Translations under genes and position numbers: made by a program
Shown: positions 33,117 through 51,652 of the stretch, one piece after another
Layout: the number at the start of each line of letters is the position of its first letter
Position numbering within the stretch: the first letter of the stretch is position 1
Notes under the pieces: generated by a model
The model's input: the letters and a program-made list of their open reading frames with translations, nothing else
What the model was told of the DNA's origin: nothing
The model's database searches: none
IMG/VR virus record: IMGVR_UViG_3300036770_007539
Location: 237,008-301,007 of that record
DNA length: 64,000 nucleotides
Direction: 5' to 3' (one strand)

Positions 33117-33258
33117 TTGACAATCTCTGGTTTGTTGCTATATATATGGTGTGACGACGAGACGAGACGAAACGAAACGCATCGCGAAACGATGCGAAAC
33201 GGAACGAATCGGCTCACGAACGACGCACGCTTGACAAGTGCCGGATCGGCGCTAGGAT
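33117..33258 (+). promoter_or_regulatory. Tandem sigma70-like promoters, unit 1
   Basis: TTGACA 33117-N16-TATATA; TTGACA 33231-N16-TAGGAT. Confidence 0.75.
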
Positions 33259-33340
33259 AGTGGTGTGGCGGATCGTCACGCCGTTGCCGGACGGATTCCG
33301 GTATCTCCCATGGGGGCAACGCCCCCGGAAAGGATCTCCC

Positions 33341-33634
33341 GTGTCAAAGGGAGCGATCCGTAGGAGAGCCCGTCGCTACAGGGAGCACGGGCTCTCCTTC
33401 ATCGTGCGCGTTCGGCTGGCGAAAGCCGCCGAACGCGCGATGAGCGACGAGGGCGGTCTCCGCGCCCTCGGCGCGGAGATGATCACGCATCGCACGTACA
33501 CAATGTGTACGTGCGATGCGTGCGACGAGTGGATCGCCGAGTGGAAGCTCGGCGATTTCACCATCAAAACCGACAGCGGATACATCGTATCCGCTGTCAA
33601 AAACCAACCCGTGCTCCCCTCTTCGGAGGGTTGA
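33341..33634 (+). CDS. Hypothetical protein
   Basis: AAAGGA RBS and GTG start; stop lies inside a repeat hairpin. Confidence 0.55.
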   Translation: MSKGAIRRRARRYREHGLSFIVRVRLAKAAERAMSDEGGLRALGAEMITHRTYTMCTCDACDEWIAEWKLGDFTIKTDSGYIVSAVKNQPVLPSSEG

Positions 33635-33642
33635 GCGCGGGT

Positions 33643-33701
33643 TGCGTCGCCAAGGTCCGCTTTCGAGCGGAGGGGGTTCGATTCCCCCGCGACGCACTAC
33701 C
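33643..33701 (+). ncRNA. Anticodon-less tRNA-like element 1
   Basis: TGCGTCGC/GCGACGCA stem; T-arm GGGGG-TTCGATT-CCCCC. Confidence 0.7.
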
Positions 33702-33761
33702 GCGCCAGACGGATTCTGGTGTTTCTCGAATGGGGGACATATGTCCCCGGAGGATAAGAGC

Positions 33762-34496
33762 ATGATGAAAAAGTACAATATTGCCGCGAAGTCCGCTCCC
33801 GCTCCCGCCCCCGCCGCCGCCCCCGTCGCCGCCGCCGTCCTCGCCGCCCCGGAGAACCCGGGCGTGTGGTTCGACCTCCACATCACGCGATTCAAAGAGG
33901 TGGGTTGCTCGGCTCGGGGCAACTTCGCGATGGTGCCGTCGGGCACCGTCGCGATCCTAGGGGCGAGCGACTACGAAGTCGGAGACGCCCTTTTGTCATA
34001 CGACTTCGATCGGGAGGGGCACACGCCCCTCAGCACCGCCCTCTCGCTCCGCATCTGGGCGGACCACACGTGGTGGGGAAAGGAATACCTCAAAGGCTGG
34101 GGCGCCGCCGCCCGCCGAAAGGCGGAGCGGATCTTGAACGACCTCGCGACGCCCGGTGGTAGCGACGAGGAGGACTACCCGGCATGGGTAGCTGCTGCAA
34201 AGCAGTATACTCTCTACTGCTTCCCCCCGTTCGACTTGTATCAGCGTATTCTTGTTGTGGAGTCTGACAGGTGCGGGTTCATAACCGCCCGCGTCGACGA
34301 GCAGCATCCGGATGAGAGCAAGCCCATGCACGGGGGCTGGCTGGTGCTTGCCCTTGCTCGAACGCAAGACCTGCCATCCAAGACCCGCCAAGCATGGGAG
34401 ATGTGCTCCCCGCTGTGGAGGGCGAGAGCCCTCGAATACATCCGTATGGTTGGATTTAAGGTTACGCCAGGAAGTTTCCTGGCTGATCTGGTCTGA
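33762..34496 (+). CDS. Hypothetical protein with an Ala/Pro-rich N-terminal linker
   Basis: RBS and ATG after a structured leader; 244 aa. Confidence 0.65.
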   Translation: MMKKYNIAAKSAPAPAPAAAPVAAAVLAAPENPGVWFDLHITRFKEVGCSARGNFAMVPSGTVAILGASDYEVGDALLSYDFDREGHTPLSTALSLRIWADHTWWGKEYLKGWGAAARRKAERILNDLATPGGSDEEDYPAWVAAAKQYTLYCFPPFDLYQRILVVESDRCGFITARVDEQHPDESKPMHGGWLVLALARTQDLPSKTRQAWEMCSPLWRARALEYIRMVGFKVTPGSFLADLV

Positions 34497-34538
34497 CCTG
34501 TCTCCCCCGCGCTCCCCTTCGGGGTCGAGCGCGGGGGC

Positions 34539-34611
34539 GTGCATCGCTTTGGAGTCTCGTTCCCCCGCAAGGGGGAACGAGGAGGGGGTTCGATTCCCTC
34601 ACGATGCACCA
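34539..34611 (+). ncRNA. Anticodon-less tRNA-like element 2
   Basis: GTGCATCG/CGATGCAC stem; TTCGATT T-loop; ends ACCA. Confidence 0.75.
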
Positions 34612-34898
34612 TGAGGAACATTCGTTCCTCCCGTTGTCGGACGGATTCCGGCTTCTCGTTGGGGCGCTCGCGCCGCCGAGCGGGAGGCGTTCCGCGCTTC
34701 CCTTCGCGGCGATGAGCGCCGTGAGGGGAATCGCGGTCGCCGCCTCGGCGACCGCGACGTCATCTGACCCATCTGCCCCTGGCTCCCCTCGCAAGAGGGT
34801 CGAGCCGGGGGCATCACCCCGAGGAACATTCGTTCCTCACCCTGACCGGAGGGTGTCCGGTGCTTCCAAGGGGATGAATGTCCCCGGAAAGGATTCTG

Positions 34899-35111
34899 AT
34901 GACCATCGGCGAGGCGGTCGACCGCCTCGTCTCGGAGGGGTACAACCCCGACCGAGACGACCTCCCCGCATGGGCAAAGGGGAAGGGGTTCCGACAGGAA
35001 CTCCGGACCCTCCCCTGCGGGGAGGAGTGCTGCGGGCAAGGGTACGCCCTTGTCCGCGGCAACGACGACGAGGAGGAGGAGCGGTTCATTCCGCTTCCTC
35101 CTCTCTTCTGA
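34899..35111 (+). CDS. Hypothetical protein with CGEECCG motif (paralog of 40796..41086)
   Basis: AAAGGA RBS; shared motif. Confidence 0.6.
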   Translation: MTIGEAVDRLVSEGYNPDRDDLPAWAKGKGFRQELRTLPCGEECCGQGYALVRGNDDEEEERFIPLPPLF

Positions 35112-35163
35112 GACTCGCCCCTGGCTCCCCTCGCAAGAGGGTCGAGCCGGGGGCATTTTTTCT

Positions 35164-35408
35164 GCGCTACATTGGCTATTTGGAGATCTAGTGTATTCGA
35201 AGCCGTACTATAAGAAATATTCTTCTTTCAATGACTTCTTTTTCTTTTCTCTTTTCCAAGAAAGAGGGGGGAGGGGGAGTCAATGAAAAAAAATCTTCTT
35301 TACAAGAGGCTTTACCTTTCTTTTTAGAGATCATGTTTCTTCGAAGCCAGTGCAGGTCTGACATTTCTAATCAATCGTTCGTTTTATTACTCTCTTGATA
35401 GCTAGGGC
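35164..35408. repeat. AT-rich spacer element 1
   Basis: GCGCTACATTGGCT ... AGCCAGTGCAG ... GCTAGGGC. Confidence 0.75.
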
Positions 35409-35433
35409 ATATTGTCGTGTTTGCGTGCGTAAC

Positions 35434-35535
35434 TTGACAAGTGATGGATCGTTGCTAGTATGTAGGGTGTGAGATGAACGCAAACGAGACAACGCAAGCG
35501 CGCTTGATTGACAAGCGGTGCAGCGGTGCTAGTAT
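35434..35535 (+). promoter_or_regulatory. Tandem sigma70-like promoters, unit 2
   Basis: TTGACA 35434-N16-TAGTAT; TTGACA 35508-N16-TAGTAT. Confidence 0.8.
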
Positions 35536-35819
35536 GCGGTCATCGAAGATTCGACGCAGCATAGGGGCGTCGAGACGAGCCGCCGTTAGCGGTGCTCTAA
35601 CAGAGCAGTCACGGGCTAGCCCGTGAATCGAGCCGGGCGATTCCCGGTGGTGAGCAAGGGATCTTGCGGCTTTGCCGGTTGAAGCCGCAAGATCCCTTGC
35701 CCTTGATAATCTGTGGAAGCTGTGCATAATGGTGTGCATGGCTTTGGGGGTCAATCCCCGCTTTGCCGGAGAGTGTCCGGTAACGTCCAAGGGGACGCAT
35801 GTCCCCGGAAAGGACTTTC

Positions 35820-36185
35820 TTGAACCTCCAAAAGAGGATCGAGGAAGTGGACCAGGCGCTCGCGCGTCTGGTCCAGAGCGAGATCGTCGTCGCGCAGGTA
35901 GTGCTCGACGATCTGATCTACCTCCACCGCCCCGCCAGCCGTCAGCACGTCTTGCGACAGCGGGCGGATCGCCTACTCCAGGATCGGGACTGGCGAGTCC
36001 AGCCGATCCTGGAGCGGCGCGAGCGACTGGAGCGCCTTCGCGGGCTGCTCGTCGCTCGCGCCGCACGCGCCGCAGGTCGCGACACCTGCGGCTACTGTGG
36101 GTGGGACAACGGTCCCATCGACCCCGCCACAGGTCGCGGTCTCAGCCGTCAAGGCTGGGATTGCGGCTATTGCGGGGGGAACTAA
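35820..36185 (+). CDS. Coiled-coil protein with a C-terminal Zn finger
   Basis: CGYCGWD..CGYC; TTG start after AAAGGA. Confidence 0.6.
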   Translation: MNLQKRIEEVDQALARLVQSEIVVAQVVLDDLIYLHRPASRQHVLRQRADRLLQDRDWRVQPILERRERLERLRGLLVARAARAAGRDTCGYCGWDNGPIDPATGRGLSRQGWDCGYCGGN

Positions 36186-36243
36186 CCCTTCTCTCCGCAT
36201 CGTTTCCTCCGCGCTCCCCTTCGGGGTCGAGCGCGGGGGAGGC

Positions 36244-36312
36244 TGCATCTTCTCGCTTGGAGGCGAGCGCCCCTTGCGGGGCGGACGGGTTCGATTCCCG
36301 TAGGATGTACCA
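36244..36312 (+). ncRNA. Anticodon-less tRNA-like element 3 (four-arm)
   Basis: TGCATCTT/AGGATGTA; GG-containing D-like loop; 4-nt-loop middle arm; ACGGG-TTCGATT-CCCGT; ends ACCA. Confidence 0.75.
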
Positions 36313-36380
36313 TGAGAGCTTGTCTCTCCCGCGTCGGACGGATTCCGATTGTCTGCGATCGAGAAAGGAGGACTGTCCAC

Positions 36381-36722
36381 ATGGCACAGTACCTCGGAAA
36401 CGCCTTCTCGCTCGGTATGCTCGATTGTCTCACGGCGGAAACGCCTGTGAGCGTCGAGTGTGCCGCCTTCACGCTCGACGAGGCACGCGCCTACGTCGAG
36501 CACAACCGCCCGACCTCGACGGTCGGGCACCTCGACACGGCGGAACTCTTCTCCGCCATGTTGGGGTCTTCCGTGGAGATGCGCCGCGTCTCCACGTCTC
36601 TGATCGGCGGGGATGAGATCCTCGTCGGTCAATACAACGGTCCGCGTCTTCCGGAGGGGGCGAAGAGCCTCCCCGAGGGCGCCAAGGTCCGCTGGATTCT
36701 GGCGCGCATCGTCGCGCGCTGA
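36381..36722 (+). CDS. acrIII-1: DUF1874 / AcrIII-1-like viral ring nuclease (anti-CRISPR type III)
   Basis: YLGNAFS, TLDEAR, STVGHLDTAELFSAMLG, EMRR, GDEIL, RLPEG match the STIV B116 / SIRV1 gp29 / YddF pattern. Confidence 0.8.
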   Translation: MAQYLGNAFSLGMLDCLTAETPVSVECAAFTLDEARAYVEHNRPTSTVGHLDTAELFSAMLGSSVEMRRVSTSLIGGDEILVGQYNGPRLPEGAKSLPEGAKVRWILARIVAR

Positions 36723-36881
36723 GGGTCCACACTCGCCCCTGGTTCCCCGCAAGGGTTGAGCCGGGGGCGTCCCTTCGGGGGAATATCTTTGGAAACTGCC
36801 TGCAAGTTCTGGCTTGTGGGCAGCTTCGAGGGATTGTCCCTTGACCGTAGCTAGGCGGACACCTAGCATCAGGAGGGTCAC

Positions 36882-37106
36882 ATGACTCTTCAAGAAGCAA
36901 TCCGAGAGGTCCGAGACCTTTCGGGAATCCCGGAGGAGCAGCTGCTCCGGGATTGGAACGAGAAGAAGTGCCAGTCTATGGACTGGCACTTCGACACCGA
37001 GACGGTCGAAGACCGTCTCGGAGAGTTGGTGACGTACTTCTACGTGGAAATCATCCCCGAAGGGGATGGTTTCCGCGTCAGGTCTCGAAAAGAGACCTGG
37101 CGATGA
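36882..37106 (+). CDS. Hypothetical protein
   Basis: AGGAGG RBS; 74 aa. Confidence 0.6.
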   Translation: MTLQEAIREVRDLSGIPEEQLLRDWNEKKCQSMDWHFDTETVEDRLGELVTYFYVEIIPEGDGFRVRSRKETWR

Positions 37107-37413
37107 GCCTCGCCCCCGCGTTCCCCTTCGGGGTCGAGCGCGGGGGCACTCGCGGGTTGAGCCGAAAGGTTCCCCGCTCTGACTTCAGGTGGCTCCGACG
37201 CTGATAACGGCGCGGGTTTGATACCCGCTGGAGGACACAGAACATCCTCCTAGCGAAAAGCCGCAGCGGGGAGTGCTTCCGATTCGGGTTACGGTGCAGG
37301 TTTGAGTCCTGCTCTCCCGCGTCACGGGGGTCGGTTGAGACGCCGCCGAACGGAAGCAACGCCTGATTGCAACAACAATAAAGGGGGCGCATATCCCCCG
37401 GAAAGGATATGGT

Positions 37414-38127
37414 TTGAGGACCATCTGCATCGGCGACATCCACGGATGTATCGCCGAGTTTCAAAAGCTCGTGGAGGTTCTCGCGCCCACGAGCGAGGAT
37501 CGGATCGTCCTGTTGGGCGATCTGATCGACAAGGGTCCAAAAAGCGCAGAAGTGGTTCGCTTCGCCCGCGAGATCGGAGCGACCACCATTCAGGGCAACC
37601 ACGAGGAGAAGGCTCTTCGATGGTTTGCCCACGAGAAGACTCGGATCGCCACGGGGAAGGCGAATCCGATGAGCCCTCCCGAGCACAAGGTTCGGGAGTG
37701 GAACACGATCCCCGCCGATGATCGGGAGTGGCTGGCAGCTGCTCCCGTTTACACGGATCTCGGCTCCGGGTTCCTCGCCGTTCACGGCGGGATGCTGCCC
37801 GGGGTCAAGCCACAAGATCACAAGAAGGGAATCCCCCTCCGCCTGAGGTTCGTCAACGACAAGGGCAAGTTTCTGCCCCTCGACGACGACCACGGCGATC
37901 CTGAGGGAGGTATCCCCTGGTACCAGGTCTACGATGGGGAGCACTCCCTGGTGGTGGGTCACACGGTTCACAGCCTGGAGTATCCCCGAATGGATCGTAT
38001 CGGGGATCGGGTGATCTGGCACCTGGACACGGGTTGCGTTCATGGTGGTCGCCTGACGGCGCTCATCCTGGAGACGCAAGAAGTCGTCCAGGTACAAGCG
38101 TCCCAAGTCTACAAGGCGCGGGACTGA
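37414..38127 (+). CDS. Calcineurin-like metallophosphoesterase (ApaH/PrpE/Pnkp-phosphatase-like)
   Basis: GDIHG, GDLIDKG, GNHE, HGG, GHT, LDTGCVHGGRLTA. Confidence 0.9.
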   Translation: MRTICIGDIHGCIAEFQKLVEVLAPTSEDRIVLLGDLIDKGPKSAEVVRFAREIGATTIQGNHEEKALRWFAHEKTRIATGKANPMSPPEHKVREWNTIPADDREWLAAAPVYTDLGSGFLAVHGGMLPGVKPQDHKKGIPLRLRFVNDKGKFLPLDDDHGDPEGGIPWYQVYDGEHSLVVGHTVHSLEYPRMDRIGDRVIWHLDTGCVHGGRLTALILETQEVVQVQASQVYKARD

Positions 38128-38447
38128 GGCGATTGGATTGTTCCTGCGTTCCCCGCAAGGGTTGAGCGCAGGAACAAGTTTCAAGAAGAAAGGAAGAGGA
38201 AGTGGAAATCTGTATGGTTTCGGGTTTTCCGACTCCTTGCGGGTGTTTTGCCTGCCAGGAGTCGGTGGAGCAGGCGCGCGGTGGCAACTGCCACTGCAGC
38301 GCCTGCTGCAAGGTTCGCTTCGGAAACGAAGCGAACGAAGCGAACGAAGGTTGCCGATGGGAGGCGGTTCGACCGCCTCGTCCTCGGCAGTAGGAATCGC
38401 CCCATCGCGTTCCCCCTTGCGGGGTCGAGCGCGATGGGGATTTTTCT

Positions 38448-38683
38448 GCGCTACATTGGCTATATCTGAGATCTTGACATATTCGTTGCTGATGCAGAAT
38501 CTTTTTTTCTTCAATGATTTTTCTTTTTTCTTTTCTACGGGAGGGAGAAACAAGAGAATCAATGAGCTAAGATATTCTTCAAAAGAAACGACTTGTCATT
38601 TATCTTTTACGAGATCAAACACATTCGGAGCCGATGCAGCTCTGATTCGTTTATCAAACGTTTGTTTAGTTCTCAGCTAGGGC
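38448..38683. repeat. AT-rich spacer element 2
   Basis: GCGCTACATTGGCT ... AGCCGATGCAGC ... GCTAGGGC. Confidence 0.75.
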
Positions 38684-38717
38684 TAGGGTGTTCGTTTCTG
38701 CGTGAATCTGTGCAGCC

Positions 38718-38873
38718 TTGACAACGGGCGGATCGATGCTAGATTGTATGGTGTGAGAGAGAGCAACGAATCGAAACAAGCGAGCGAATGAGCGAACGCA
38801 TAAGCCGCGACGGTAGCGGTTAGCGGGTAGCGGATAGCGCGTAGCTTGACACGGTTGGATTCGCTGCTAGGCT
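38718..38873 (+). promoter_or_regulatory. Tandem sigma70-like promoters, unit 3
   Basis: TTGACA 38718-N16-TAGATT; TTGACA 38846-N16-TAGGCT. Confidence 0.75.
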
Positions 38874-38894
38874 TTCTCATAGAAGGGAGGTTAC

Positions 38895-39200
38895 ATGCAA
38901 CAGATTTGTGGAAGATGCTCCGGAAGGGAGAGTCATTCCTGTTGCCCTGATTGCAGGGGAAAGGGCTGGCTTTCCCGCGCGGACGTTCGCGTTCTTCGCT
39001 TGAAGCAGGCGGCATTCTGTTTGCTTCACGAGAAGGCGCGCGAGCATTGGCTCACGCTGAGTGAGCCGCGTCCGCGCCAGGAGTCCTTCGTGCTGGACTA
39101 CGTGTTCAAGCACGAGCAATGGTACTTCGAGACGATCGTCTCGAAGTTTACCCCGGAGCAGAAGCGCACGCTTCTGCGTCGGTTCCCCTGCAATCCCTGA
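38895..39200 (+). CDS. Hypothetical protein with a DnaJ-type Zn motif
   Basis: CGRCSGR..CPDCRGKG. Confidence 0.6.
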   Translation: MQQICGRCSGRESHSCCPDCRGKGWLSRADVRVLRLKQAAFCLLHEKAREHWLTLSEPRPRQESFVLDYVFKHEQWYFETIVSKFTPEQKRTLLRRFPCNP

Positions 39201-39307
39201 ACCGGGTAGAGCGAGCCCTCGCAAGGGGGCTCGTTCCCTACAACCGGATCTGGATCGTGATTGATCTAGGTTCGATTATAGGGATTACCCCTATTGAAAG
39301 GAGGAGC

Positions 39308-39445
39308 ATGAAGTTTCTGGAAAAGCTCTCGAATCGATTGCCCTACGTCGTTCAAGAGTCCCCGCTCGACCCGATCACTTGGATCTTTGCGGTCCCTTTG
39401 CTGGTCCTTTACGGGATTGGCTACATTGTCGGGGGATTGACGTGA
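39308..39445 (+). CDS. Small membrane peptide
   Basis: GAGGAG RBS; hydrophobic C-terminal half. Confidence 0.5.
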   Translation: MKFLEKLSNRLPYVVQESPLDPITWIFAVPLLVLYGIGYIVGGLT

Positions 39446-39615
39446 AAGACGACTTCCTCGACGATATCATCGCAAAGATCGACTCTCTTCGCATCGAGGA
39501 GTGCGAGAGCGGGGCGATCATTCGCAAGCCGGAGGTGAGCGACTTCAAGCGTCCCTCCCTTCTACCCAAGATCATCAACATGCGATCCTTGCTGGTCGAT
39601 TCTAGCAAGTCGTGA
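39442..39615 (+). CDS. Hypothetical protein
   Basis: GTG start overlapping the upstream stop. Confidence 0.45.
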   Translation: MKDDFLDDIIAKIDSLRIEECESGAIIRKPEVSDFKRPSLLPKIINMRSLLVDSSKS

Positions 39616-39621
39616 ACGGCA

Positions 39622-39687
39622 GCATCCCCTCGTGTGGTTGCGAGCACCTGAAAAGGTGGACAGGTTCGATTCCTGTGGGATGCACTA
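39622..39687 (+). ncRNA. tRNA-like element 4 (compact cloverleaf)
   Basis: GCATCCC/GGGATGC; CTCG-TGTGGTTG-CGAG; CACC-TGAAAA-GGTG; ACAGG-TTCGATT-CCTGT; ends ACTA. Confidence 0.75.
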
Positions 39688-41086: not shown

Positions 41087-41206
41087 CTTGGGAGGATCTT
41101 GGGGGAGTGGCAACGTTGCTGCTCCTCTTTCTGATGGTTCTCTTTGCGTGAAGTCCTGTCCGGGGCGAGGTTGAGCCGAAAGGTTCCCTCGTTCCGGGTC
41201 TTTTCT

Positions 41207-41444
41207 GCGCTACACTGGCTATTTCTTTGGAGATCATGCATGTTCAGATTCTTTTTTGTAATCAAAATCTTTCAGTGTTTTTCCTTTTTCTTTTTTCACA
41301 ACATAAGAGAAATAAACAACAATGATAAATGTGGTTTCAATAAACGATTTCTAACGATCATTTCTTTTCAAAGAGACATGAATGTTCAGAGCCTATGCAG
41401 CCCTGATTGTGTTATCAAACGTTCGTTTAGTTCTTAGCTAGGGC
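41207..41444. repeat. AT-rich spacer element 3
   Basis: GCGCTACACTGGCT ... AGCCTATGCAGC ... GCTAGGGC. Confidence 0.75.
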
Positions 41445-41479
41445 ATAAAGCGCGTTAGATCGTGAATATAGGCGTGCGC

Positions 41480-41595
41480 TTGACAAGTAGCTGATCGTTG
41501 CTAGTATGTAGGGTGTGAGAGGGAGAGTGTGAACGGAAACGCTAGCAAGCGCGAACGGGCTAGCGGTTGACAACGGCTCGAGCGTGGTGTATACT
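41480..41595 (+). promoter_or_regulatory. Tandem sigma70-like promoters, unit 4
   Basis: TTGACA 41480-N16-TAGTAT; TTGACA 41567-N17-TATACT. Confidence 0.8.
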
Positions 41596-44735: not shown

Positions 44736-44788
44736 CCAATCTCAACACCTGGAGCATGTGTCTAAACTGCTCCTTTCCAAAGGAGAAT

Positions 44789-45189: not shown

Positions 45190-45237
45190 GGCTTGGGGAC
45201 GCATCTGGGGCTGAACGGTCCTGGGTGCGTCCCCGAA

Positions 45238-45489
45238 GCGCTACATTGGCTCAACAGTGATCTTTGCATGTTCAGAACGTTCTTTATGCAAAAGCATCTT
45301 TTTTCTTTCAATGATTGCTATTTCTTCTTTCAAGTAACGACATGAATAATCAATGAATGACAAGTATCTTTCAAACAAAGAACTTTCAAATCATATATCT
45401 TTTCAACCAGATCTTTGTTCGTTCAGAGCCTATGCAGTCCTGACTTTTTCACTGGCTTTTTGACGGTTTTCGTCCCTTCTGGCTAGGGC
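45238..45489. repeat. AT-rich spacer element 4
   Basis: GCGCTACATTGGCT ... AGCCTATGCAGT ... GCTAGGGC. Confidence 0.75.
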
Positions 45490-45522
45490 TAGATCGCTTG
45501 TTTTCGCGCATATTCGCGCGCC

Positions 45523-45649
45523 TTGACAATCGGCGGATCGTTGCTAGTATGTAGGGTGTGAGAGAGAGCACGAACGAACGAATGAACGAACGAACGCTAG
45601 CACGACGCTAGCGCGATGCGTTTGACGCGGCTCGATTCGATGCTACGTT
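45523..45649 (+). promoter_or_regulatory. Tandem sigma70-like promoters, unit 5
   Basis: TTGACA 45523-N16-TAGTAT; TTGACG 45622-N16-TACGTT. Confidence 0.75.
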
Positions 45650-45683
45650 GCAAGTGTCGCCGATACATGGCGAGGGAGGCAAT

Positions 45684-46157
45684 ATGTGGATTGACCAGCG
45701 CGAGATCGACCGAGAGAACGAGAACTACAGCCTGGAGTCGCACCAGGAGGTAGTTCAGGAACAGGCTCGGAAAGAGATGATCGCGAGCTTGACCAAGCTC
45801 TGGGAGGAGACGGATCGCAAGATCGACGGCAAACGCGAAGCTCTCACGAGTGAGAGCTTCGACGAATACATCCGTCGGATCGCAGATGATAACGCCTATG
45901 AGAAGCGCGAAGCTCTCTCGGAGAAGCTCGGACGCAAACTCACCCGTGATGAGGAGCACGAAATCTTTCGCGAGGAGAAGGATAGCATCATTCAAAAGAT
46001 CAATGGCGAGATCGAGATCCTGGTCGCCAAGCTCGACATGATCGAAACGCAACTTCGCAGCCTGGGTGCTCGCAAGGCACGTCCTTACGAGCACTGGAAC
46101 GAGGAGGAGCACATCGTTCAGTATCTGGAAACCAGGAACGACAACCGCGACTACTGA
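45684..46157 (+). CDS. Acidic coiled-coil protein (paralog of 53676..54170)
   Basis: Shared LGAR..RPYEH.NE.E..YLE.R..NDR C-terminus. Confidence 0.7.
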   Translation: MWIDQREIDRENENYSLESHQEVVQEQARKEMIASLTKLWEETDRKIDGKREALTSESFDEYIRRIADDNAYEKREALSEKLGRKLTRDEEHEIFREEKDSIIQKINGEIEILVAKLDMIETQLRSLGARKARPYEHWNEEEHIVQYLETRNDNRDY

Positions 46158-46212
46158 ACCCAAGATCCCGGCTCGCCCTTCGGGGCGGGTCGGGTTCGAC
46201 AACGGAGGAATC

Positions 46213-46485
46213 ATGGAAAAGATTGCACGAGTGGTTGAGCACCCCGAAGCCCAAAAGTACGACCTGCGATGCAACTATCATCGGGGCGTCCTGGTGGACG
46301 TGCCTTCGGACAAGGTTCTGCGAGGGTACGATGGCGGTCTGTACGCCACCGTGGACGGTGAGTGGTACAGCGTTCATCCGTCCAATACTTCCAACCTGAT
46401 CGGAGCCCTGGGTATTCGATACCAGCTCCGAGAGGAAGGCTCGGAGGGAGACATGATCTCCTTCCTGCAAGCGCAAACCGACTGA
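46213..46485 (+). CDS. Hypothetical protein
   Basis: GGAGG RBS. Confidence 0.6.
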   Translation: MEKIARVVEHPEAQKYDLRCNYHRGVLVDVPSDKVLRGYDGGLYATVDGEWYSVHPSNTSNLIGALGIRYQLREEGSEGDMISFLQAQTD

Positions 46486-46587
46486 TCTGGACGGGCGAGC
46501 CCGCAAGGGCTCGCTCCCTGCAATCGGGATTCGATACGGATCGAATCTCGATTCTAGGGAATGTCCCCTAGCAACGGAGGTATTGTG

Positions 46588-46908
46588 ATGGGCAAACTGG
46601 CAGGATCGATGTGGAGGATCAATAAGTCGAGCATGGTGGTTCCCCTCCAGCCTGTCGAGGACGCGGATGCGTATTGGTTTGGCTATGCTGAACTTGACGA
46701 GGGAGACACGGTAATCATCCTCGGTGAACCGGTCCCCACGGTCGATTCAGACCCCGCTAAGAAGCACCACAGCTACGTCCCTGTCGAGTTTCGTAACGGT
46801 TACGCGCCTTTTTTCGGGTGGCGCAACGGTTATGTGTCCAACTACAAGGGTTACATGAACGCGACCTACTTCATCTGCGAATCTATCTGGATGGAGAGAG
46901 TAGGGTAA
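46588..46908 (+). CDS. Hypothetical protein (SH3-like?)
   Basis: GGAGG RBS after a switch-like leader. Confidence 0.55.
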   Translation: MGKLAGSMWRINKSSMVVPLQPVEDADAYWFGYAELDEGDTVIILGEPVPTVDSDPAKKHHSYVPVEFRNGYAPFFGWRNGYVSNYKGYMNATYFICESIWMERVG

Positions 46909-47018
46909 TATCCAGAACTAGGACGGGCGAGCCCGCAAGGGCTCGCTCCCTGCAATCGGGATTCGACACTTGTCGAGTTTCGATTCTAGGGAATGTCCCC
47001 TAGCACCAAGGAGGCTTT

Positions 47019-47270
47019 ATGCCGCTTTTCGTTTCTTTCCAGGATTCCAGCACCGATCCCACCTACGCGCTCGCCGATGATGTGGTCCTCGTCGAGAGCA
47101 GCGACGACGATGACAACAATCCTTGCGTCGGGCGCTCGGTTCGTCGCACCGCACCCGTCGCTCCGATGACGGCGGAAGAGATTCGCGCTTTCGCTATGGT
47201 CATGGGTTGGTCATGGGAGACGCACCGTGATGGGACACTGGTCCTATCTACGGGCGTCCAAGATATCTGA
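47019..47270 (+). CDS. Hypothetical protein (paralog of 42633..42890)
   Basis: Same leader and N-terminus. Confidence 0.7.
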   Translation: MPLFVSFQDSSTDPTYALADDVVLVESSDDDDNNPCVGRSVRRTAPVAPMTAEEIRAFAMVMGWSWETHRDGTLVLSTGVQDI

Positions 47271-47389
47271 TAGGAAGGGCGAGCCCTCGCAAGGGGGCTC
47301 GCTCCCTGCAATCGAACCTTGATGCCGAAAACATCGGAGCTATGTCAAGGTTCGATTCTAGGGATGTCCCTAGTGTTACGGAGGTTTCC

Positions 47390-47848
47390 ATGAACGACGA
47401 TTATCTGCACGTCAACCAGTTCAGCTTCAACTTCCGCCAGAATCAGTACGAGATCCTGGAACTCAAGGGTGTCAACATCTACGAAGATAGGACCATCTGG
47501 TGCTCTCATGCCGATGATGGGGAAGGCTGGGATGTATTCATCTGCTACCAGCCCGAAGATGACGACAATACTGGGACCATCAATCCTAGCCATCTCAACA
47601 AGTCTTGGGCTAAGAAGTTCAAGACTGAGATGCAAGAAGATCAGGACGGTGAACCCGCTCCTTGGAACATGGGCAGGAATCTGAGCATGAGCGAGGTTCA
47701 AAGCATGGTTCGCTACTTCAGGCGAAAGATACTGGTGGGTGTCCTTCGGCAGAAACGCGACCGTGAACTCGGTTACTGTGACGAGGATCTCAACCGAGAA
47801 AAGTGGTCCAACTACTGGATCGGCGAAGGCTATACCGAATACTACTGA
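47390..47848 (+). CDS. Hypothetical protein (paralog of 52511..52957)
   Basis: Shared GEGWDVFI.Y.PEDDD, SWAKKFKTEMQEDQDG, MVRYFRR. Confidence 0.75.
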   Translation: MNDDYLHVNQFSFNFRQNQYEILELKGVNIYEDRTIWCSHADDGEGWDVFICYQPEDDDNTGTINPSHLNKSWAKKFKTEMQEDQDGEPAPWNMGRNLSMSEVQSMVRYFRRKILVGVLRQKRDRELGYCDEDLNREKWSNYWIGEGYTEYY

Positions 47849-47902
47849 AACAACGCACCTGGGCATGTGTCTAAACTGCCCTTTTCTTGAAAGGAGAATG
47901 TC

Positions 47903-48193
47903 ATGAACAATGATTTTCGTGCTTCCATTCTTGCCGCTCGTGAAGATTGGCGCATATCCAATCTGATCAAAGCAATCCAGTCTCATCTGGACGGTGAGGA
48001 AATCTATCTTCCCCGATTCGAGGAAGATCAGCAGGGCGGTCATTTCGTGCTCTCGGAATGGATCAAGATCCCTGCTTCCCGAATCATGAGAATATTGGGA
48101 GTCGACCATCCCCGCGATTTGGGATGGGGGCGTGATGGTGAACCACCGACTCCGAATCCTTCGGCAATTCCTTTCAAAGGAGAATGTCAATGA
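47903..48193 (+). CDS. Hypothetical protein
   Basis: AAAGGAG RBS. Confidence 0.6.
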   Translation: MNNDFRASILAAREDWRISNLIKAIQSHLDGEEIYLPRFEEDQQGGHFVLSEWIKIPASRIMRILGVDHPRDLGWGRDGEPPTPNPSAIPFKGECQ

Positions 48194-48390
48194 ACGTGAA
48201 TGAGTTTCTGAAAGAGGCATTGGAGCCGCAACCTCAAATGCGCAAGGGGCAGCATTTCATCAATCGTCTTACGGTGGTGAAGCCCTGGCTATCTTACAAG
48301 CTCCAGCAGACAGGCTTGGATCCATACTACGTTGACAGCAAGCTGCCTGCTGCAATCCAATACACCGTAGAAAACTGGGATCTCTTCTAA
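48190..48390 (+). CDS. Hypothetical protein
   Basis: AAAGGAG RBS; ATGA coupling. Confidence 0.6.
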   Translation: MNVNEFLKEALEPQPQMRKGQHFINRLTVVKPWLSYKLQQTGLDPYYVDSKLPAAIQYTVENWDLF

Positions 48391-48400
48391 AAGAGATACC

Positions 48401-48461
48401 GCATCGACTGGTCCGCACCCGCAAGGGTGCGGAGGAGGTTCGATTCCTCCACGATGCACTA
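48401..48461 (+). ncRNA. Anticodon-less tRNA-like element 5
   Basis: GCATCG/CGATGC; CTGGT linker; GCAA hairpin; GGAGG-TTCGATT-CCTCC; ends ACTA. Confidence 0.75.
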
Positions 48462-48513
48462 AGCACACAAGCTGTTGCATTGGGCAATTGCAAGTGCTTT
48501 CGTGAGGTGAGTC

Positions 48514-48891
48514 ATGGATTTCGTTCTTTCCCGCAAGACTGGCAGCGACATGTACGGATTCTGCCCCCTTTTCCAGTCTTTGGTCATCGGGAATCTGCGC
48601 GTCTCCATCCAAGCGAGTCGAACCCACTTCTCCTCTCCCCAAGCAGACTTCTCCAACTCGGACTTGTATTCTGAGTTCGAAGTGGCGCTGCTGACGCTCC
48701 GAGATGGCAAGTGGTTTCATCCGGAGAAGGACAAGCGGTTCGCTCAAACCGAATGGGCAAAGTACTACTGGAAAGACTACGATGACGTAGCTGCTTACGT
48801 ACCGCGTCATCTGGTGGCGCAAATGATAACTGACCTGCGCTTGGATGCGGCTTCAAGGCGAAAGCGTATGAAGCCGATTGCCAAGAAGTGA
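48514..48891 (+). CDS. Hypothetical protein
   Basis: GAGGTG RBS; 125 aa. Confidence 0.65.
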   Translation: MDFVLSRKTGSDMYGFCPLFQSLVIGNLRVSIQASRTHFSSPQADFSNSDLYSEFEVALLTLRDGKWFHPEKDKRFAQTEWAKYYWKDYDDVAAYVPRHLVAQMITDLRLDAASRRKRMKPIAKK

Positions 48892-48956
48892 CCGCACAGC
48901 CTCTCGGCTCGCCCTTCGGGGCGGGTCGGGAGGCTTTTTTTTTTGCGAAGAAGTAG

Positions 48957-49210
48957 AGCGGCTTCGCCGCTCCAATGTTTCTATCAATTTCTTTTTTTCA
49001 AAGCCATATTCATTTCAATTTCAAAAACAAATCATTTCTTTGAAATCTATTCAGATTCAATTACAAGATACTTTGATTTCAAACAGTATCTTTGATCATC
49101 TTATTCCATACAATGTTTTTCCATTCTTTTCTAACAAAGCCAATGTAGCGCTGACATTCCGTCAATGGTTTTTGTCCCGTTTTTTGCCTTTTACCCCTTC
49201 GGGCTAGGGC
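48957..49210. repeat. AT-rich spacer element 5 (variant)
   Basis: GAGCGGC-TTC-GCCGCTC CAATG ... AGCCAATGTAGCGC ... GCTAGGGC. Confidence 0.7.
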
Positions 49211-49234
49211 AGAATACGTCTAAACGCACGCGAT

Positions 49235-49360
49235 TTGACAAGCGCAAGATCGTTGCTAGTATGTAGGGTGTGAGAACGAATGCGAACACGCAAACGCTCT
49301 CGTCGAGAGTAGCACGGCGCGATTGACAATGTTTGACAATCGCGGATTCGTGGCTACAAT
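49235..49360 (+). promoter_or_regulatory. Tandem sigma70-like promoters, unit 6
   Basis: TTGACA 49235-N16-TAGTAT; TTGACA 49333-N16-TACAAT. Confidence 0.8.
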
Positions 49361-49397
49361 ACAGATGCGGCAATCAAGCCGCGTTTCGGAGGTTGTC

Positions 49398-49853
49398 ATG
49401 TCCAACACGTTCAAGATCGATCCCTCGTTCCTCGTCAAGTTCGTTTCCTCCGTCGTGGATGCTGCGAACAAGCGGATTCCGGTCAAGGATCTGGCTGGAA
49501 TCCTGCAAAGGCTCGACAGCGATCAGGGGCGCGTGGCTGCGTCGTTCGACGCCGACGATCTGGAAAAGGTGATCGTCGGCACGGTCAACAACCTGCACGG
49601 ATTCGACATTCGTGCGGGTCGTTCGGGTGGCGTCGGGCGCGTGGAGATGTTCAAGGGTGGAGCATCCGACGAGCCGAGCGGTGTCGCCGCGCAGATCGCG
49701 GCACGTCTGCGTGAATACTGCAAGGCGGCTGGAAAGCCCTTGGAGATCCCCGAGTCCCGGCGGATCGTCAACGCTTACCTGAACGATCTGATCTTGCAGC
49801 AGGCACCGGGCAATCTGACGGCGGAGGATCTGCTGTCTCGATACGGCGGCTGA
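49398..49853 (+). CDS. Promoter-proximal protein (paralog of 51807..52232)
   Basis: Shared VDAAN.R.PV, RAGRSGGVGR, FKGG, NAYL. Confidence 0.75.
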   Translation: MSNTFKIDPSFLVKFVSSVVDAANKRIPVKDLAGILQRLDSDQGRVAASFDADDLEKVIVGTVNNLHGFDIRAGRSGGVGRVEMFKGGASDEPSGVAAQIAARLREYCKAAGKPLEIPESRRIVNAYLNDLILQQAPGNLTAEDLLSRYGG

Positions 49854-49982
49854 TCGGGTGAGGGAGCGAGCCTTTAGGGGCTCGCTCCCTGTAACCGAGG
49901 GTTGACACCGAAAACATCGGATCTATGTCAATCTTCGGTTACAGGGAGCAATTCCGCTATCCTGTATTCTGGGAGTGTTTGC

Positions 49983-50243
49983 ATGAGAATGCATGAGATT
50001 CTGGCACCGATCCGCGCGCACGCACGTCTCGCTCCGCTGGATCGTCTGTCCGTGGATGGTGCGAAGATCCTCGCCGACATGGTGTACGCCATGCGTGGCG
50101 CGGATCGTCGCTGTCAAGAGCACGCGGCGGATTGTCTCGCGGCTCTGCGTCCGCGTCTCTACGATCTCTGGGACGTGGCTCGCGCTGTCGAGCCGTGTCC
50201 AGAGTGGCTGAAGCCACTGGCGGAGTACGGTCCTCGACACTGA
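49983..50243 (+). CDS. Hypothetical protein
   Basis: GGGAG RBS after a switch-like leader. Confidence 0.55.
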   Translation: MRMHEILAPIRAHARLAPLDRLSVDGAKILADMVYAMRGADRRCQEHAADCLAALRPRLYDLWDVARAVEPCPEWLKPLAEYGPRH

Positions 50244-50316
50244 AACAAGGGCGGGGAACGAGCCCGAATGGGCTCGTTCCCCGCCTGTCTCTCATCTCAA
50301 ACCTGGAGGTTTTCAC

Positions 50317-50655
50317 ATGCGTATGCACCCCACTACTGCCATTCTCGTGACCCTCAACACCTTCGCCCGCGAATACGTCGAGTATTACGGAGGGGTGAAT
50401 CACCTGCTGGACGTTCCTGTTCTCGCGGAACAGGGGCGTGCGCTGGAGGCGGTCATCACCGCCATCTACAAGGGAATCGTCGATGGCAGTATCCCTGCCA
50501 ACGAGCGCACACGTCAAAGCGCGCAACAGTGGAGCGAGGGGTTGATTACCCTTCCAGAATCTCTGGCATTCCTGATCTCTGAGATGAAGCCGCCGAAAGG
50601 CATTCCCCTTCACGGTGAACGCTTGGCGGTCATTCTTGGAGGCTTCTTGCCTTAG
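50317..50655 (+). CDS. Hypothetical protein
   Basis: GGAGG RBS. Confidence 0.6.
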   Translation: MRMHPTTAILVTLNTFAREYVEYYGGVNHLLDVPVLAEQGRALEAVITAIYKGIVDGSIPANERTRQSAQQWSEGLITLPESLAFLISEMKPPKGIPLHGERLAVILGGFLP

Positions 50656-50802
50656 TCATCGACACGAGAGCGAGCCCTCGCAAGGGGCTCGCTCCCTGCA
50701 ATCGAACCTTGACGAGCACTTGTTGCTGTGATAACGTCAAGGTTCGATTCTAGGGGATTGACAATTCTGTGTGAGCTAACCTTTCCCTCAAAGGAGGTAT
50801 CA

Positions 50803-51237
50803 ATGAACATCGAAATCGACCCGATCAGCATGGCTCTCATCAAGAACCCTCGTGCCGTTGCCAAGGCGATGGTGGTCCTGTTTTCTTTCCAGACAGCTAA
50901 GGAGAGAAGCACGGGCATCACCAGGGAATCCAACGGCAAGGGCTTCTCTTCTTACGACGATAAGAAGTGCAGCCGCTACGCACGATGGATCCTCCGCATA
51001 AGTAACAACGCCTCTGACGAGGAGGTGCGGACCAAAATCCGCAACTACCTGACGCACGGTCATCAACCCAACAACCGTGACCTGACCGGTACTCATCTGG
51101 ATGACGCTCGTATGCGCTCTCTCAAGTACGTCGGTCAGCTGAAGCGGTATGCTGACAGCAAGAAGGCTGCCAGCGCGGCGGTCACTGCACCGGTCACGGC
51201 TCCTACGGAGGCGAATGATGCAGCTGACGATTCTTGA
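50803..51237 (+). CDS. Hypothetical protein
   Basis: AAGGAGG RBS. Confidence 0.65.
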   Translation: MNIEIDPISMALIKNPRAVAKAMVVLFSFQTAKERSTGITRESNGKGFSSYDDKKCSRYARWILRISNNASDEEVRTKIRNYLTHGHQPNNRDLTGTHLDDARMRSLKYVGQLKRYADSKKAASAAVTAPVTAPTEANDAADDS

Positions 51238-51293
51238 CTATCTGATCCGTAGCAATGCGGATTGTGTAGTCCAGCAAGCTTGGAAGTGAAAGT

Positions 51294-51333
51294 GAGCGAG
51301 TCCCTGGCAACGGGGGCTCGCTCCTTTTTTTTG
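51294..51333 (+). terminator. Rho-independent terminator
   Basis: GAGCGAG..CTCGCTC stem followed by a T tract. Confidence 0.7.
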
Positions 51334-51344
51334 TGGATTTTTCA

Positions 51345-51600
51345 GCGCTAGGGCGGCTTTGCCGCCCCAATGAGATCAATGTTTGGAGCCCGATCTATTC
51401 CAATGCCCTATTTCTATTCCAACAATGCTTCTATATTCTTCTATCTATCTCTCTTTGCTTCTTTCAATTCATTCTTACAATGAACTTAAACAATCTCTTC
51501 AATGATCAATGTTTGGAGCCAATGTAGGTTTTCCATTGTTTTGGGTGATTTTTAATCTCAGAATTGGTGATTTCCCGAAAAAATGCTTTTTAGCTAGGGC
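51345..51600. repeat. AT-rich spacer element 6 (variant)
   Basis: GGGCGGC-TTT-GCCGCCC CAATG; several CAATG boxes; AGCCAATGTAG; GCTAGGGC. Confidence 0.7.
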
Positions 51601-51624
51601 ATGTTGCGCGTATGGGCGCACGAT

Positions 51625-51652
51625 TTGACAAGCGGGGGATCGTTGCTAGTAT
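51625..51652 (+). promoter_or_regulatory. Sigma70-like promoter, unit 7
   Basis: TTGACA-N16-TAGTAT. Confidence 0.8.

What the first reader, a model, noticed from the sequence alone, without database searches (positions are those of the whole stretch)
33117..51652. Seven serial early-promoter units, mostly tandem pairs with a 16-bp spacer and an AACG-rich linker
Seen: P1 = TTGACA-N16-TAGTAT followed by GTAGGGTGTGAGA or a close variant at 33117, 35434, 38718, 41480, 45523, 49235 and 51625, spaced about 2.3-4 kb apart. Six have a second promoter 74-128 bp downstream, separated by AACG/GAACG repeats. The spacer is 16 bp in nearly all copies, against the usual 17. Known: SPO1, T5 and T4 host-takeover regions use repeated strong promoters. 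Inference: the short P1-to-P2 transcript may be a small RNA or protein sponge, and the 16-bp spacing may make firing sensitive to supercoiling or a phage factor.
Basis: partly seen in the sequence, partly recalled or inferred. Interest (0 to 1): 0.6.

Follow-up and report, generated by a model that had tools for sequence, protein, structure and literature searches.

The report
Repeated tandem early-promoter cassettes in phage
Seven nearly identical strong bacterial-type promoters, six of them doubled, head seven operons of small unknown genes in a strangely GC-rich block of an uncultured 300-kb phage; they are most likely its immediate-early "takeover" switches, a known kind of device in an unusual form.

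Summary
Seven + strand promoter units stand at the stated places. Six have a second promoter 74-128 bp downstream. Twelve of the 13 promoters have a 16-bp spacer, and the linkers are T-poor and ACG-rich. The window is the last 64 kb of a 301-kb jumbo-phage contig that encodes a sigma factor; no RNA polymerase gene was found in it.

Each unit is a composite cassette: terminator hairpin, about 280 bp of AT-rich spacer with conserved boxes, P1, linker, P2. Each cassette heads an operon of small, mostly ORFan genes. Relatives from other metagenomes keep the same design, and one relative's P1 core is better conserved than the gene next to it.

Best reading: host-polymerase early promoters of a host-takeover-like region. 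The closest known kinds are the T4-type PeSL cassettes, the SPO1 takeover module and the T7 A1-A3 promoters.

No terminator lies between P1 and P2, and linker sequence is not conserved. The 16-bp spacer is common among this phage's promoter-like sites and is 17 bp in more distant relatives.

No RNA data exist, so promoter activity and timing are inferred.

The surroundings are odder than the promoters: a 52-62% GC block in a 32% GC genome, no GGCC site anywhere, tRNA-like intercistronic elements, and an extreme-skew block with an 11-bp repeat array.

The parts
33117..33144 (+). U1 P1: TTGACA-N16-TATATA, then TATGGTGTGA (variant copy)
33231..33258 (+). U1 P2: TTGACA-N16-TAGGAT, 114 bp after P1; first gene starts at 33341 (GTG)
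35434..35474 (+). U2 P1 core: -35, 16-bp spacer, TGC-TAGTAT, conserved start region
35508..35535 (+). U2 P2: TTGACA-N16-TAGTAT, 74 bp after P1. A possible third site lies at 35703-35730. A 278-nt highly structured leader runs to the gene at 35820.
38718..38758 (+). U3 P1 core (-10 TAGATT)
38846..38873 (+). U3 P2: TTGACA-N16-TAGGCT, 128 bp after P1; the gene starts at 38895
41480..41520 (+). U4 P1 core
41567..41595 (+). U4 P2: TTGACA-N17-TATACT, 87 bp after P1; the gene starts at 41616
45523..45563 (+). U5 P1 core
45622..45649 (+). U5 P2: TTGACG-N16-TACGTT, 99 bp after P1; the gene starts at 45684
49235..49275 (+). U6 P1 core
49333..49360 (+). U6 P2: TTGACA-N16-TACAAT, 98 bp after P1; the gene starts at 49398
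51625..51665 (+). U7 P1 core (start region GCAAGGTGTGAGA). No P2. The gene at 51807 is a paralog of the U6 first gene.
35117..35164 (+). End of operon 1: nested GC hairpin plus T-run
   Evidence: family D14
38400..38447 (+). End of operon 2: hairpin plus T-run
   Evidence: family D11
41160..41206 (+). End of operon 3: hairpin plus T-run
45195..45234 (+). End of operon 4: hairpin without a T-run
48898..48944 (+). End of operon 5: 17-pair hairpin plus T9
51294..51331 (+). End of operon 6: 13-pair hairpin plus T8
35157..35433 (+). U2 spacer (38% GC). Left box at 35164, its inverted copy at 35345, GCTAGGGC box at 35401, CAATG motifs.
38441..38717 (+). U3 spacer; boxes at 38448, 38629 and 38676
41201..41479 (+). 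U4 spacer; boxes at 41207, 41390 and 41437
45237..45522 (+). U5 spacer; boxes at 45238, 45427 and 45482
48936..49234 (+). U6 spacer; right box at 49138, GCTAGGGC at 49203
51324..51624 (+). U7 spacer; direct repeats at 51374 and 51503, right box at 51517, GCTAGGGC at 51347 and 51593, eight CAATG

Best explanation
The seven units are promoters read by the host RNA polymerase, of the housekeeping-sigma type with an extended -10. They start seven early operons holding about 45 small, mostly ORFan genes in a jumbo phage in which no polymerase gene was found. Each unit is a composite regulatory cassette. A terminator hairpin closes the operon before it. About 280 bp of AT-rich spacer with conserved boxes insulates the units. 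P1 carries a perfect -35, TG-n-TAGTAT and a purine-rich start region. A T-poor linker of 46-100 bp follows. P2 then sits 74-128 bp from P1, about far enough for both to be occupied at once (an inference from the known size of a polymerase footprint). P1 transcripts carry a leader of about 100-350 nt that reads through P2. P2 transcripts start 14-31 nt before the first start codon in four units. Two strong starts per operon raise and perhaps diversify early expression. The near-identity of the P1 copies comes from selection on a strong promoter, plus homogenisation among cassettes or a shared factor. Shown here: the sequence architecture, its statistics and its conservation in relatives. Inferred: promoter activity, start sites, early timing, double occupancy.
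For: The motifs are far above chance and all on the coding strand. Across the whole phage, promoter-like sites are biased 49 to 12 for the + strand and cluster in this region and at the contig start. Every unit lies after a hairpin, with a T-run in five of six, and before a Shine-Dalgarno-led gene. Tandem placement has p about 3e-9. The 41-bp P1 core is 86% alike between units, against 32-54% for its flanks, with a variable 6-nt island inside it. Relatives from other samples keep the design: terminator, AT-rich spacer, P1 with TGCTAG and a 16-bp spacer, ACGA-rich linker, then P2 at 88 or 118 bp (L019 and L020). Others have 2 to 6 tandem promoters about 80 bp apart (L015; L018 and L021 read by eye from the printed sequence). 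The L020 P1 core is 92% like window unit 3, while the adjacent gene is 70% alike in DNA and 67% in protein. The phage encodes a sigma factor with regions 2, 3 and 4, behind a site of the same type. No multisubunit polymerase was found, and the single-subunit search was uninformative. Gene content is typical of early regions: a phosphatase, a P-loop kinase, and otherwise ORFans.
Against: There are no RNA data of any kind, so no start site or timing is shown. The host is unknown. The -10 matches TATAAT at only 4 of 6 positions. The stretch from -36 to -60 is GC-rich, so there is no classical UP element next to the -35. The invariant 28-bp block (3' half of the spacer to about +7) and the GCTAGGGC box go beyond what a housekeeping sigma needs. 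The phage's own sigma could in principle read such sites.
Confidence: 0.72

Rival explanations
1. One reading: the P1-to-P2 interval is made as a discrete short RNA that acts as a small RNA or as a sponge for a protein, through its AACG repeats.
For: Linkers are enriched in short ACG-containing repeats and poor in U. The same style of linker recurs in relatives L018, L019 and L021. Some P1-P2 stretches fold somewhat better than shuffles (z from -1.0 to -3.1).
Against: The scan found no + strand terminator in any P1-P2 interval. Linker sequence is only 32-39% alike between units and has no shared structure. No Rfam family matches there. Lengths vary from 74 to 128 nt. The folded stretches include the P2 promoter itself.
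Confidence: 0.07
2. P1 is not a plain host promoter but a factor-dependent one. The invariant 28-bp block and the upstream GCTAGGGC box would be read by the phage sigma or bound by a phage regulator that switches all seven operons together. P2 would be the constitutive host promoter.
For: Conservation extends over the 3' half of the spacer and about 13 nt past the -10. GCTAGGGC occurs 8 times in 301 kb, 7 of them in these spacers. It sits 24-25 or 33-35 bp before the -35, two classes one helical turn apart. Copies within one genome share start-region variants that differ between genomes (TGTGAGA here, TGTCGGA in L019 and L020). The phage has a sigma factor. The first gene of U6 and U7, conserved in relatives, has a helix-helix-helix-hairpin N-terminal half.
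Against: The -35 and -10 are consensus housekeeping elements, and P1 and P2 share spacing and the TGC-TA-type -10. The fold search gave only weak, non-significant winged-helix-like hits. Homogenisation by recombination would also explain genome-specific variants.
Confidence: 0.25
3. The near-identity mainly reflects recombination between cassettes (concerted evolution and modular shuffling, as shown for T4-type PeSLs), not function-specific constraint on every base.
For: Copies are more alike within a genome than between orthologous cassettes of relatives. Gene order differs between the window and L015 or L019, with breakpoints at repeated intergenic elements. Many repeat families fill the intergenic spaces. 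The PeSL precedent is in PMC2839356 and PMC4122927.
Against: A 6-nt variable island sits inside the otherwise invariant core, and the flanks are strongly diverged; simple conversion tracts would not leave that pattern. The laid contigs gave only ambiguous cross-mapping joints. This reading complements the best explanation rather than replacing it.
Confidence: 0.4
4. The GC-rich block with its promoters is foreign: an assembly chimera, a recent import, or a mobile element or satellite sitting in the phage.
For: The block is 52-62% GC against 32% for the genome. Its CpG-containing tetranucleotide usage differs from the bulk of the genome.
Against: GGCC is absent from the whole 301 kb (about 420 expected), including the block (60-112 expected), and from all five relative contigs. 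Paralogs and repeat families link the block to the lower-GC DNA after it. GC3 declines gradually rather than in a step. Contigs of a second subsurface run (X2) tile nearly all of the laid stretch, 33050-38950, with no differences. Relatives show the same alternation of GC-rich genes and AT-rich spacers. No integrase or replication gene was seen among the proteins scanned.
Confidence: 0.03

Closest known systems
PeSL (promoter-early stem-loop) cassettes of T4-type phages (PMC2839356, PMC4122927)
   Same: Composite motif of a strong sigma-70-like early promoter plus a terminator stem-loop, with AT-rich DNA upstream. It is repeated many times among ORFan genes in plastic regions. Relatives differ in gene order at such repeats.
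   Different: Here the cassette is 320-450 bp, not tens of bp, and there is one per operon rather than one per gene. It has two promoters in tandem, extra conserved boxes and a 28-bp invariant block. The phage is not T4-like (its large terminase is gpA-type). Recombination at the cassettes is not shown.
SPO1 host-takeover module (Stewart et al. 1998, as cited in PMC6873191)
   Same: A cluster of some two dozen small genes in several short operons with predicted host-type promoters. The phage relies on host polymerase and on phage sigma factors for later classes.
   Different: The strength of the SPO1 promoters and the module's place in the terminal redundancy are from my own knowledge. Here the contig ends are not defined. 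SPO1 promoters are not near-identical copies in tandem pairs. There is no protein homology to the SPO1 genes (one search found nothing).
T7 early region: tandem promoters A1, A2, A3 and RNase III sites (established knowledge, not tested here)
   Same: Several strong host promoters about 100-130 bp apart at the head of an early polycistronic unit. Long intercistronic hairpins lie between genes. Here a 21-pair helix family shows 8 covarying pairs.
   Different: T7 has one such head, and this phage has seven. Cleavage of the hairpins is not shown. tRNA-like elements are not part of the T7 design.
Bacterial rRNA operon promoters P1-P2 (established knowledge)
   Same: A tandem pair about 100-120 bp apart, a 16-bp spacer, a G-rich stretch after the -10, AT-rich DNA further upstream, and tRNA-like and long-helix processing signals downstream.
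   Different: There is no UP element adjacent to the -35 (that stretch is GC-rich). No boxA-like antitermination motif was seen by eye, and none was formally searched for. The products are mRNAs.
Halovirus HF2 intergenic repeats that carry promoters (PMC8707807)
   Same: Repeated intergenic sequences with blocks conserved beyond the basal promoter. They are unique to those sites in the genome, and the authors interpret them as sites of virus-encoded regulation.
   Different: HF2 is an archaeal virus with TATA/BRE promoters. Its repeats serve middle and late genes and are not tandem pairs.

Membership tests
Housekeeping-sigma (sigma-70/sigma-A) promoter | A -35 hexamer close to TTGACA and a -10 hexamer TAnnnT, 16-18 bp apart | tested here: met
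   All 13 sites qualify. The -35 is perfect in 12 of them. Spacers are 16 bp (12 sites) or 17 bp (1 site)..
Housekeeping-sigma (sigma-70/sigma-A) promoter | Extended -10 (TG one base before the hexamer) where the -10 is imperfect | tested here: met
   TGC precedes the -10 in all seven P1 and in three P2.
Housekeeping-sigma (sigma-70/sigma-A) promoter | Transcription starts 6-8 nt after the -10 with host holoenzyme | not testable with these tools
   No RNA run holds the sequence.
Phage early / host-takeover region | Cluster of small, mostly unknown genes in short operons bounded by host-type promoters and terminators | tested here: met
   About 45 genes in 7 operons. Pfam and PHROGs name only a phosphatase, a kinase, a B116-like protein and one PHROG of unknown function..
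Phage early / host-takeover region | The phage depends on host polymerase and redirects it later | tested here: met
   A sigma factor gene is present. No multisubunit polymerase was found. The single-subunit search was uninformative because its controls were silent. The contig may be only 71% complete..
Phage early / host-takeover region | Expressed in the first minutes of infection | not testable with these tools
   No transcriptome exists and the phage is uncultured.
PeSL-type mobile regulatory cassette | Promoter and terminator stem-loop joined in one repeated intergenic motif with AT-rich upstream DNA | tested here: met
   Alignment A1; terminators; spacers are 35-39% GC.
PeSL-type mobile regulatory cassette | Recombination between copies produces indels, swaps or mini-circles | tested here: inconclusive
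   Gene order and content differ from L015 and L019 at repeated elements. The joints in laid contigs are short cross-mappings between paralogous units.
PeSL-type mobile regulatory cassette | Found in T4-type myoviruses | tested here: not met
   The terminase is gpA-type, with at most 25% identity to any cultured phage. It is therefore filed as 'works like', not as a member.
Small regulatory or sponge RNA | A discrete transcript with its own 3' end | tested here: not met
   No + strand terminator-like site lies in any P1-P2 interval.
Small regulatory or sponge RNA | Conserved sequence or structure among copies and relatives | tested here: not met
   Linkers are 32-39% alike. Only composition and short ACG repeats recur.
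rRNA-operon-type P1-P2 promoter pair | A-T-rich UP element directly upstream of the -35 | tested here: not met
   The stretch from -36 to -60 is GC-rich in all units; the AT-rich DNA begins about 90 bp upstream.

The most novel reading that the evidence does not exclude
The block is a self-contained, host-mimicking immediate-early island built like a stable-RNA operon. Its parts would be rrn-style tandem promoters with 16-bp spacers, host-like GC-rich codons (GC3 up to 0.8, against about 0.3 in later genes), tRNA-like minihelices and long covarying helices that recruit RNase P/Z and RNase III to cut the polycistronic RNAs, and a shared operator (the 28-bp block plus the GCTAGGGC box) that lets one phage factor switch all seven operons together.
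Probability: 0.15. Interest if true: 0.75.

Novelty: new variant of a known kind. Interest (0 to 1): 0.5.

Why it matters
Early regions decide whether an infection succeeds, yet for uncultured jumbo phages they are almost unannotated. This locus gives a clean, repeated and comparatively supported early-promoter signature. That signature can be used to mark early operons in this lineage and to look for the host. It also extends the PeSL idea, in which promoter-terminator cassettes act as units of regulation and possibly of gene shuffling, to a phage unrelated to T4. It comes with three features that can be tested at the bench: tandem P1/P2 starts that give two leader forms, tRNA-like punctuation of mRNAs, and a 20-30 point GC difference between early and late genes of one genome.

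Tried and rejected
- Exact-pattern scans for the P1 core found nothing in IMG/VR, JGI metagenome contigs or GTDB genomes. So it is not a copied host promoter in any held genome.
- A protein-pattern scan of IMG/VR found no relative.
- Three homolog contigs could not be read because no DNA was held for them.
- No RNA run holds the stretch. The single read-laying run gave only fragmented DNA contigs, and its joints are cross-mappings between paralogous units.
- Rfam finds nothing in the promoter units. Its only hits in the block are weak tRNA-like ones.
- A k-mer search for a distinct late-promoter motif upstream of + strand genes between 55 and 232 kb of the genome gave nothing clear. The target of the phage sigma therefore remains unknown.
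- Fold search on the U6/U7 first-gene family gave no significant match.
- Host inference from the phosphatase gave only 31-37% identity to Myxococcaceae genes, which is too weak to use.
- The 14-nt inverted boxes that bracket the spacers were checked as RNA pairing. The changes between units are not compensatory, so a conserved long-range RNA stem is not supported (by eye).
- A MITE reading was rejected because the DNA outside the boxes is conserved too.

Full report
WHERE THE WINDOW LIES

The window is the last 64 kb (237008-301007) of a 301-kb linear IMG/VR virus record that CheckV rates 71% complete. The record carries a DnaE-type polymerase, a type I topoisomerase, a gpA-type large terminase and collagen-like fibre genes. 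No cultured phage has a terminase more than about 25% identical. Four runs of one subsurface-metagenome study hold the sequence. Two freshwater studies hold short contigs that are mostly 90-99% alike. No run on record as RNA holds it.

THE OBSERVATION

- The pattern TTGACA-N15-18-TAGTAT occurs six times, all on the + strand, against 0.02 expected.
- Alignment adds the variants at 38718 (TAGATT) and 33117 (TATATA, one base shorter before GGTGTGA).
- The motif after the -10 follows six copies.
- Second promoters lie 114, 74, 128, 87, 99 and 98 bp downstream in units 1-6. Unit 7 has none.
- Six of the eight other promoter-like matches in the 19-kb block fall in those short intervals (p about 3e-9).
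- Twelve of the 13 promoters have a 16-bp spacer.
- All P1 and three P2 have TG one base before the -10, which makes them extended -10 promoters.
- Linkers hold 9-17% T and carry short ACG-containing repeats. AACG is roughly ten times denser than in the block in four of six linkers.

Alignment of the seven units and repeat finding show a composite cassette. Its parts, in order:

1. A GC hairpin closes the preceding operon. It has a T-run in five of six cases.
2. A 14-nt box follows directly after it in units 2-5.
3. About 280 bp of DNA at 35-39% GC comes next. CAATG is eight times enriched there in one orientation.
4. An inverted copy of the first box lies 181-189 bp after it.
5. A GCTAGGGC box follows. 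Seven of its eight copies in 301 kb lie in these spacers. It sits 24-25 or 33-35 bp before the -35, two distance classes one helical turn apart.
6. Then come P1, the linker and P2.

Within P1, the -35 and a 28-bp block (from the 3' half of the spacer to about +7) are nearly invariant, while six spacer bases between them vary freely. The 41-bp core is 86% alike between units, against 32-54% for everything around it.

WHAT THE UNITS DRIVE

Each unit is followed by Shine-Dalgarno-led genes on the + strand, about 45 genes in seven operons. Pfam and PHROGs recognise only a metallophosphatase, a P-loop kinase, a B116-like protein and one PHROG of unknown function.

P2 would start 14-31 nt before the first start codon in units 3-6. 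P1 would add a leader of 100-140 nt. In unit 2 both promoters precede a 278-nt leader that folds far better than shuffles (z = -6.8).

No + strand terminator-like site lies between any P1 and P2. P1 transcripts should therefore read through P2.

The phage encodes a sigma factor with regions 2, 3 and 4, itself behind a TTGACA-N16 site. No multisubunit RNA polymerase was found. The single-subunit search was uninformative because its controls were silent.

Promoter-like sites of this type are biased 49 to 12 for the + strand over the whole record. They cluster from window position 33 kb to the contig end and in the first 50 kb of the contig. Spacers are 16 bp in 19 of these sites and 17 bp in 16.

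RELATIVES

Homologs of two gene families from the block led to five contigs from other samples.

- L019 holds two cassettes 1.6 kb apart. Each has a terminator, an AT-rich spacer with the same boxes, P1 (TTGACA-N16-TGCTAGAnT), an ACGA-rich linker, and P2 at 88 or 118 bp. L020 holds one such cassette, with P2 at 118 bp.
- The L020 P1 core is 92% like window unit 3. The gene next to it is 70% alike in DNA and 67% in protein.
- The more distant L015 alternates GC-rich genes with AT-rich spacers, followed by two to six tandem promoters about 80 bp apart with 17-bp spacers. L018 and L021 show a similar spacer and, read by eye from the printed sequence, two tandem sites with T-poor linkers between them.

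So the tandem design, the TAG-type -10 and the style of linker are conserved. The 16-bp spacing is a trait of the closer lineage only.

Copies within one genome share start-region variants that differ between genomes. This points to homogenisation among cassettes, or to co-evolution with a factor.

Gene order differs between the window and L015 or L019, with breakpoints at repeated intergenic elements.

MOST LIKELY MECHANISM

These are host-polymerase promoters of an immediate-early, takeover-type region, built as terminator-spacer-promoter cassettes. Two strong starts per operon raise early expression and give two leader forms.

The minimum P1-P2 distance of 74 bp is about one polymerase footprint, so both could be occupied at once (inference). 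The purine-rich start region resembles the start region of phage T5 promoter N25, which favours promoter escape. That resemblance is from memory and is a lead, not a test.

The role of the T-poor linker is open. It cannot hold many start or stop codons, A/U-rich RNase E sites or U-runs. It could also be a binding platform.

COMPARISON WITH KNOWN SYSTEMS

- The closest described kind is the PeSL cassette of T4-type phages. It joins a strong sigma-70-like promoter to a terminator stem-loop with AT-rich DNA upstream, is repeated among ORFans, and mediates shuffling (PMC2839356, PMC4122927).
- The SPO1 host-takeover module has 26 small genes in several operons with predicted promoters (PMC6873191).
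- The T7 A1-A3 head with RNase III sites and the rrn P1-P2 pairs resemble it in function. Both comparisons rest on established knowledge and were not tested here.
- Halovirus HF2 shows that virus intergenic repeats can carry promoters with extra regulatory blocks (PMC8707807).

This locus is not a member of the PeSL family in the strict sense. It has a different phage type, a much larger unit, one cassette per operon and tandem promoters. I file it as a new variant of that kind.

The small-RNA or sponge idea lacks a 3' end, conserved sequence and conserved structure. The 16-bp spacer is common among this phage's promoter-like sites and is not kept in distant relatives with the same design. Sensitivity to supercoiling or to a factor stays untested.

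IS THE GC-RICH BLOCK FOREIGN?

No. GGCC is absent from all 301 kb (about 420 expected), including the block (60-112 expected), and from all five relative contigs. Paralogs (66% and 44% identity) and repeat families tie the block to the lower-GC DNA that follows it. GC3 falls gradually from about 0.8 to 0.35 along the direction of transcription.

LIMITS

All functional statements rest on sequence, statistics and comparison. No transcript, host or protein-binding data exist.

Noticed in passing
window 33100-52300 (genome 270-289 kb): The block is 52-62% GC in a 32% GC genome. GC3 of + strand genes falls from about 0.8 (33-37 kb) to about 0.35 at the window end. CpG-containing tetranucleotides are depleted in the bulk of the genome but not in the block. 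Relatives keep the alternation of GC-rich genes and AT-rich spacers. The cause is unknown. Ideas: codon matching to a GC-rich host before phage tRNAs act, or evasion of silencers that bind AT-rich DNA.
   Followed up: partly
whole genome G000; L015, L018-L021: GGCC occurs zero times in 301 kb (about 420 expected) and zero times in all five relative contigs. GAGCTC occurs once against 39 expected. This is a lineage-wide restriction-avoidance signature and a possible clue to the host.
   Followed up: partly
window 29950-32310: The + strand holds only 7% G but 36% C (skew -0.6 to -0.75), although the block carries ORFs on both strands, so the bias follows the DNA strand rather than the sense strand. 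It is the only such block in the genome. The 207-aa protein groups with hypothetical proteins of tailed phages.
   Followed up: partly
window 32311-33010: A 250-bp AT-rich centre (26% GC, with 10-bp CCACTTTTTA repeats) is followed by about 25-40 tandem 11-bp units (GATAGAAnnGG; + strand 4% C, skew +0.8). The array ends 100 bp before unit 1. The skew changes sign here, which looks like an origin, a centromere-like iteron array or an R-loop-prone zone.
   Followed up: partly
window 33644-33698, 34541-34610, 36245-36311, 39622-39686, 48401-48460: Five intercistronic tRNA-like minihelices. Each has a 6-7-bp acceptor stem, one or two tetraloop hairpins in place of the D and anticodon arms, a canonical T arm, discriminator A, then CCA or CUA. 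Compensatory changes occur in both stems, and Rfam gives weak tRNA-Sec and mascRNA hits. They are probably RNase P/Z processing signals. The acceptor and T arm recall tRNA-Arg, from memory only.
   Followed up: partly
window 39205-39310, 41965-42071, 42536-42635, 44410-44528, 46490-46590, 46922-47021, 47278-47392, 50668-50805; L015, L018: A family of intercistronic elements about 100 nt long. Each has a terminator-like hairpin without a U-run, then a 21-pair helix with 8 covarying pairs, then the Shine-Dalgarno sequence. Relatives conserve it. It resembles the RNase III sites of the T7 early region.
   Followed up: partly
window 35542-35819: The 278-nt leader after unit 2 P2 is a string of stable hairpins (z = -6.8), including a 20-pair perfect hairpin, with a further promoter-like site at 35703-35730. 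It may be a non-coding RNA or a regulatory leader.
   Followed up: partly
window 49398-49853 and 51807-52232; L015 7672-8139; L018-L021: The first gene after units 6 and 7 belongs to a family that in every relative follows a long spacer with promoters (six in a row in L015). It has an invariant RAGRxGGxG motif. The model (pLDDT 77) has a helix-helix-helix-hairpin N-terminal half, with only weak winged-helix-like fold hits.
   Followed up: partly
window 43172-43455 vs L015 2634-2916: A 284-bp stretch covering an 85-aa gene is 95% identical to the distant relative, while neighbouring shared genes are 67-82% identical. This suggests recent exchange or a strongly constrained element.
   Followed up: no
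window 55026-55099, 57081-57165, 59131-59336; genome 30-39 kb: Only five tRNA genes were found in 301 kb (Lys-UUU, Leu-CAA, Gln-UUG, Ser-GGA, Thr-GGU), plus a group I intron at 59131-59336. Three of the tRNAs read A/U-ending codon families, which fits an AT-rich phage in a host of higher GC.
   Followed up: no
L021 1813-1990 and L018 1-110: The AT-rich spacer of these relatives is built of tandem 13-bp units (ATTCATAAATATC type). This is another periodic array just upstream of tandem promoters, like the 11-bp array before window unit 1.
   Followed up: no
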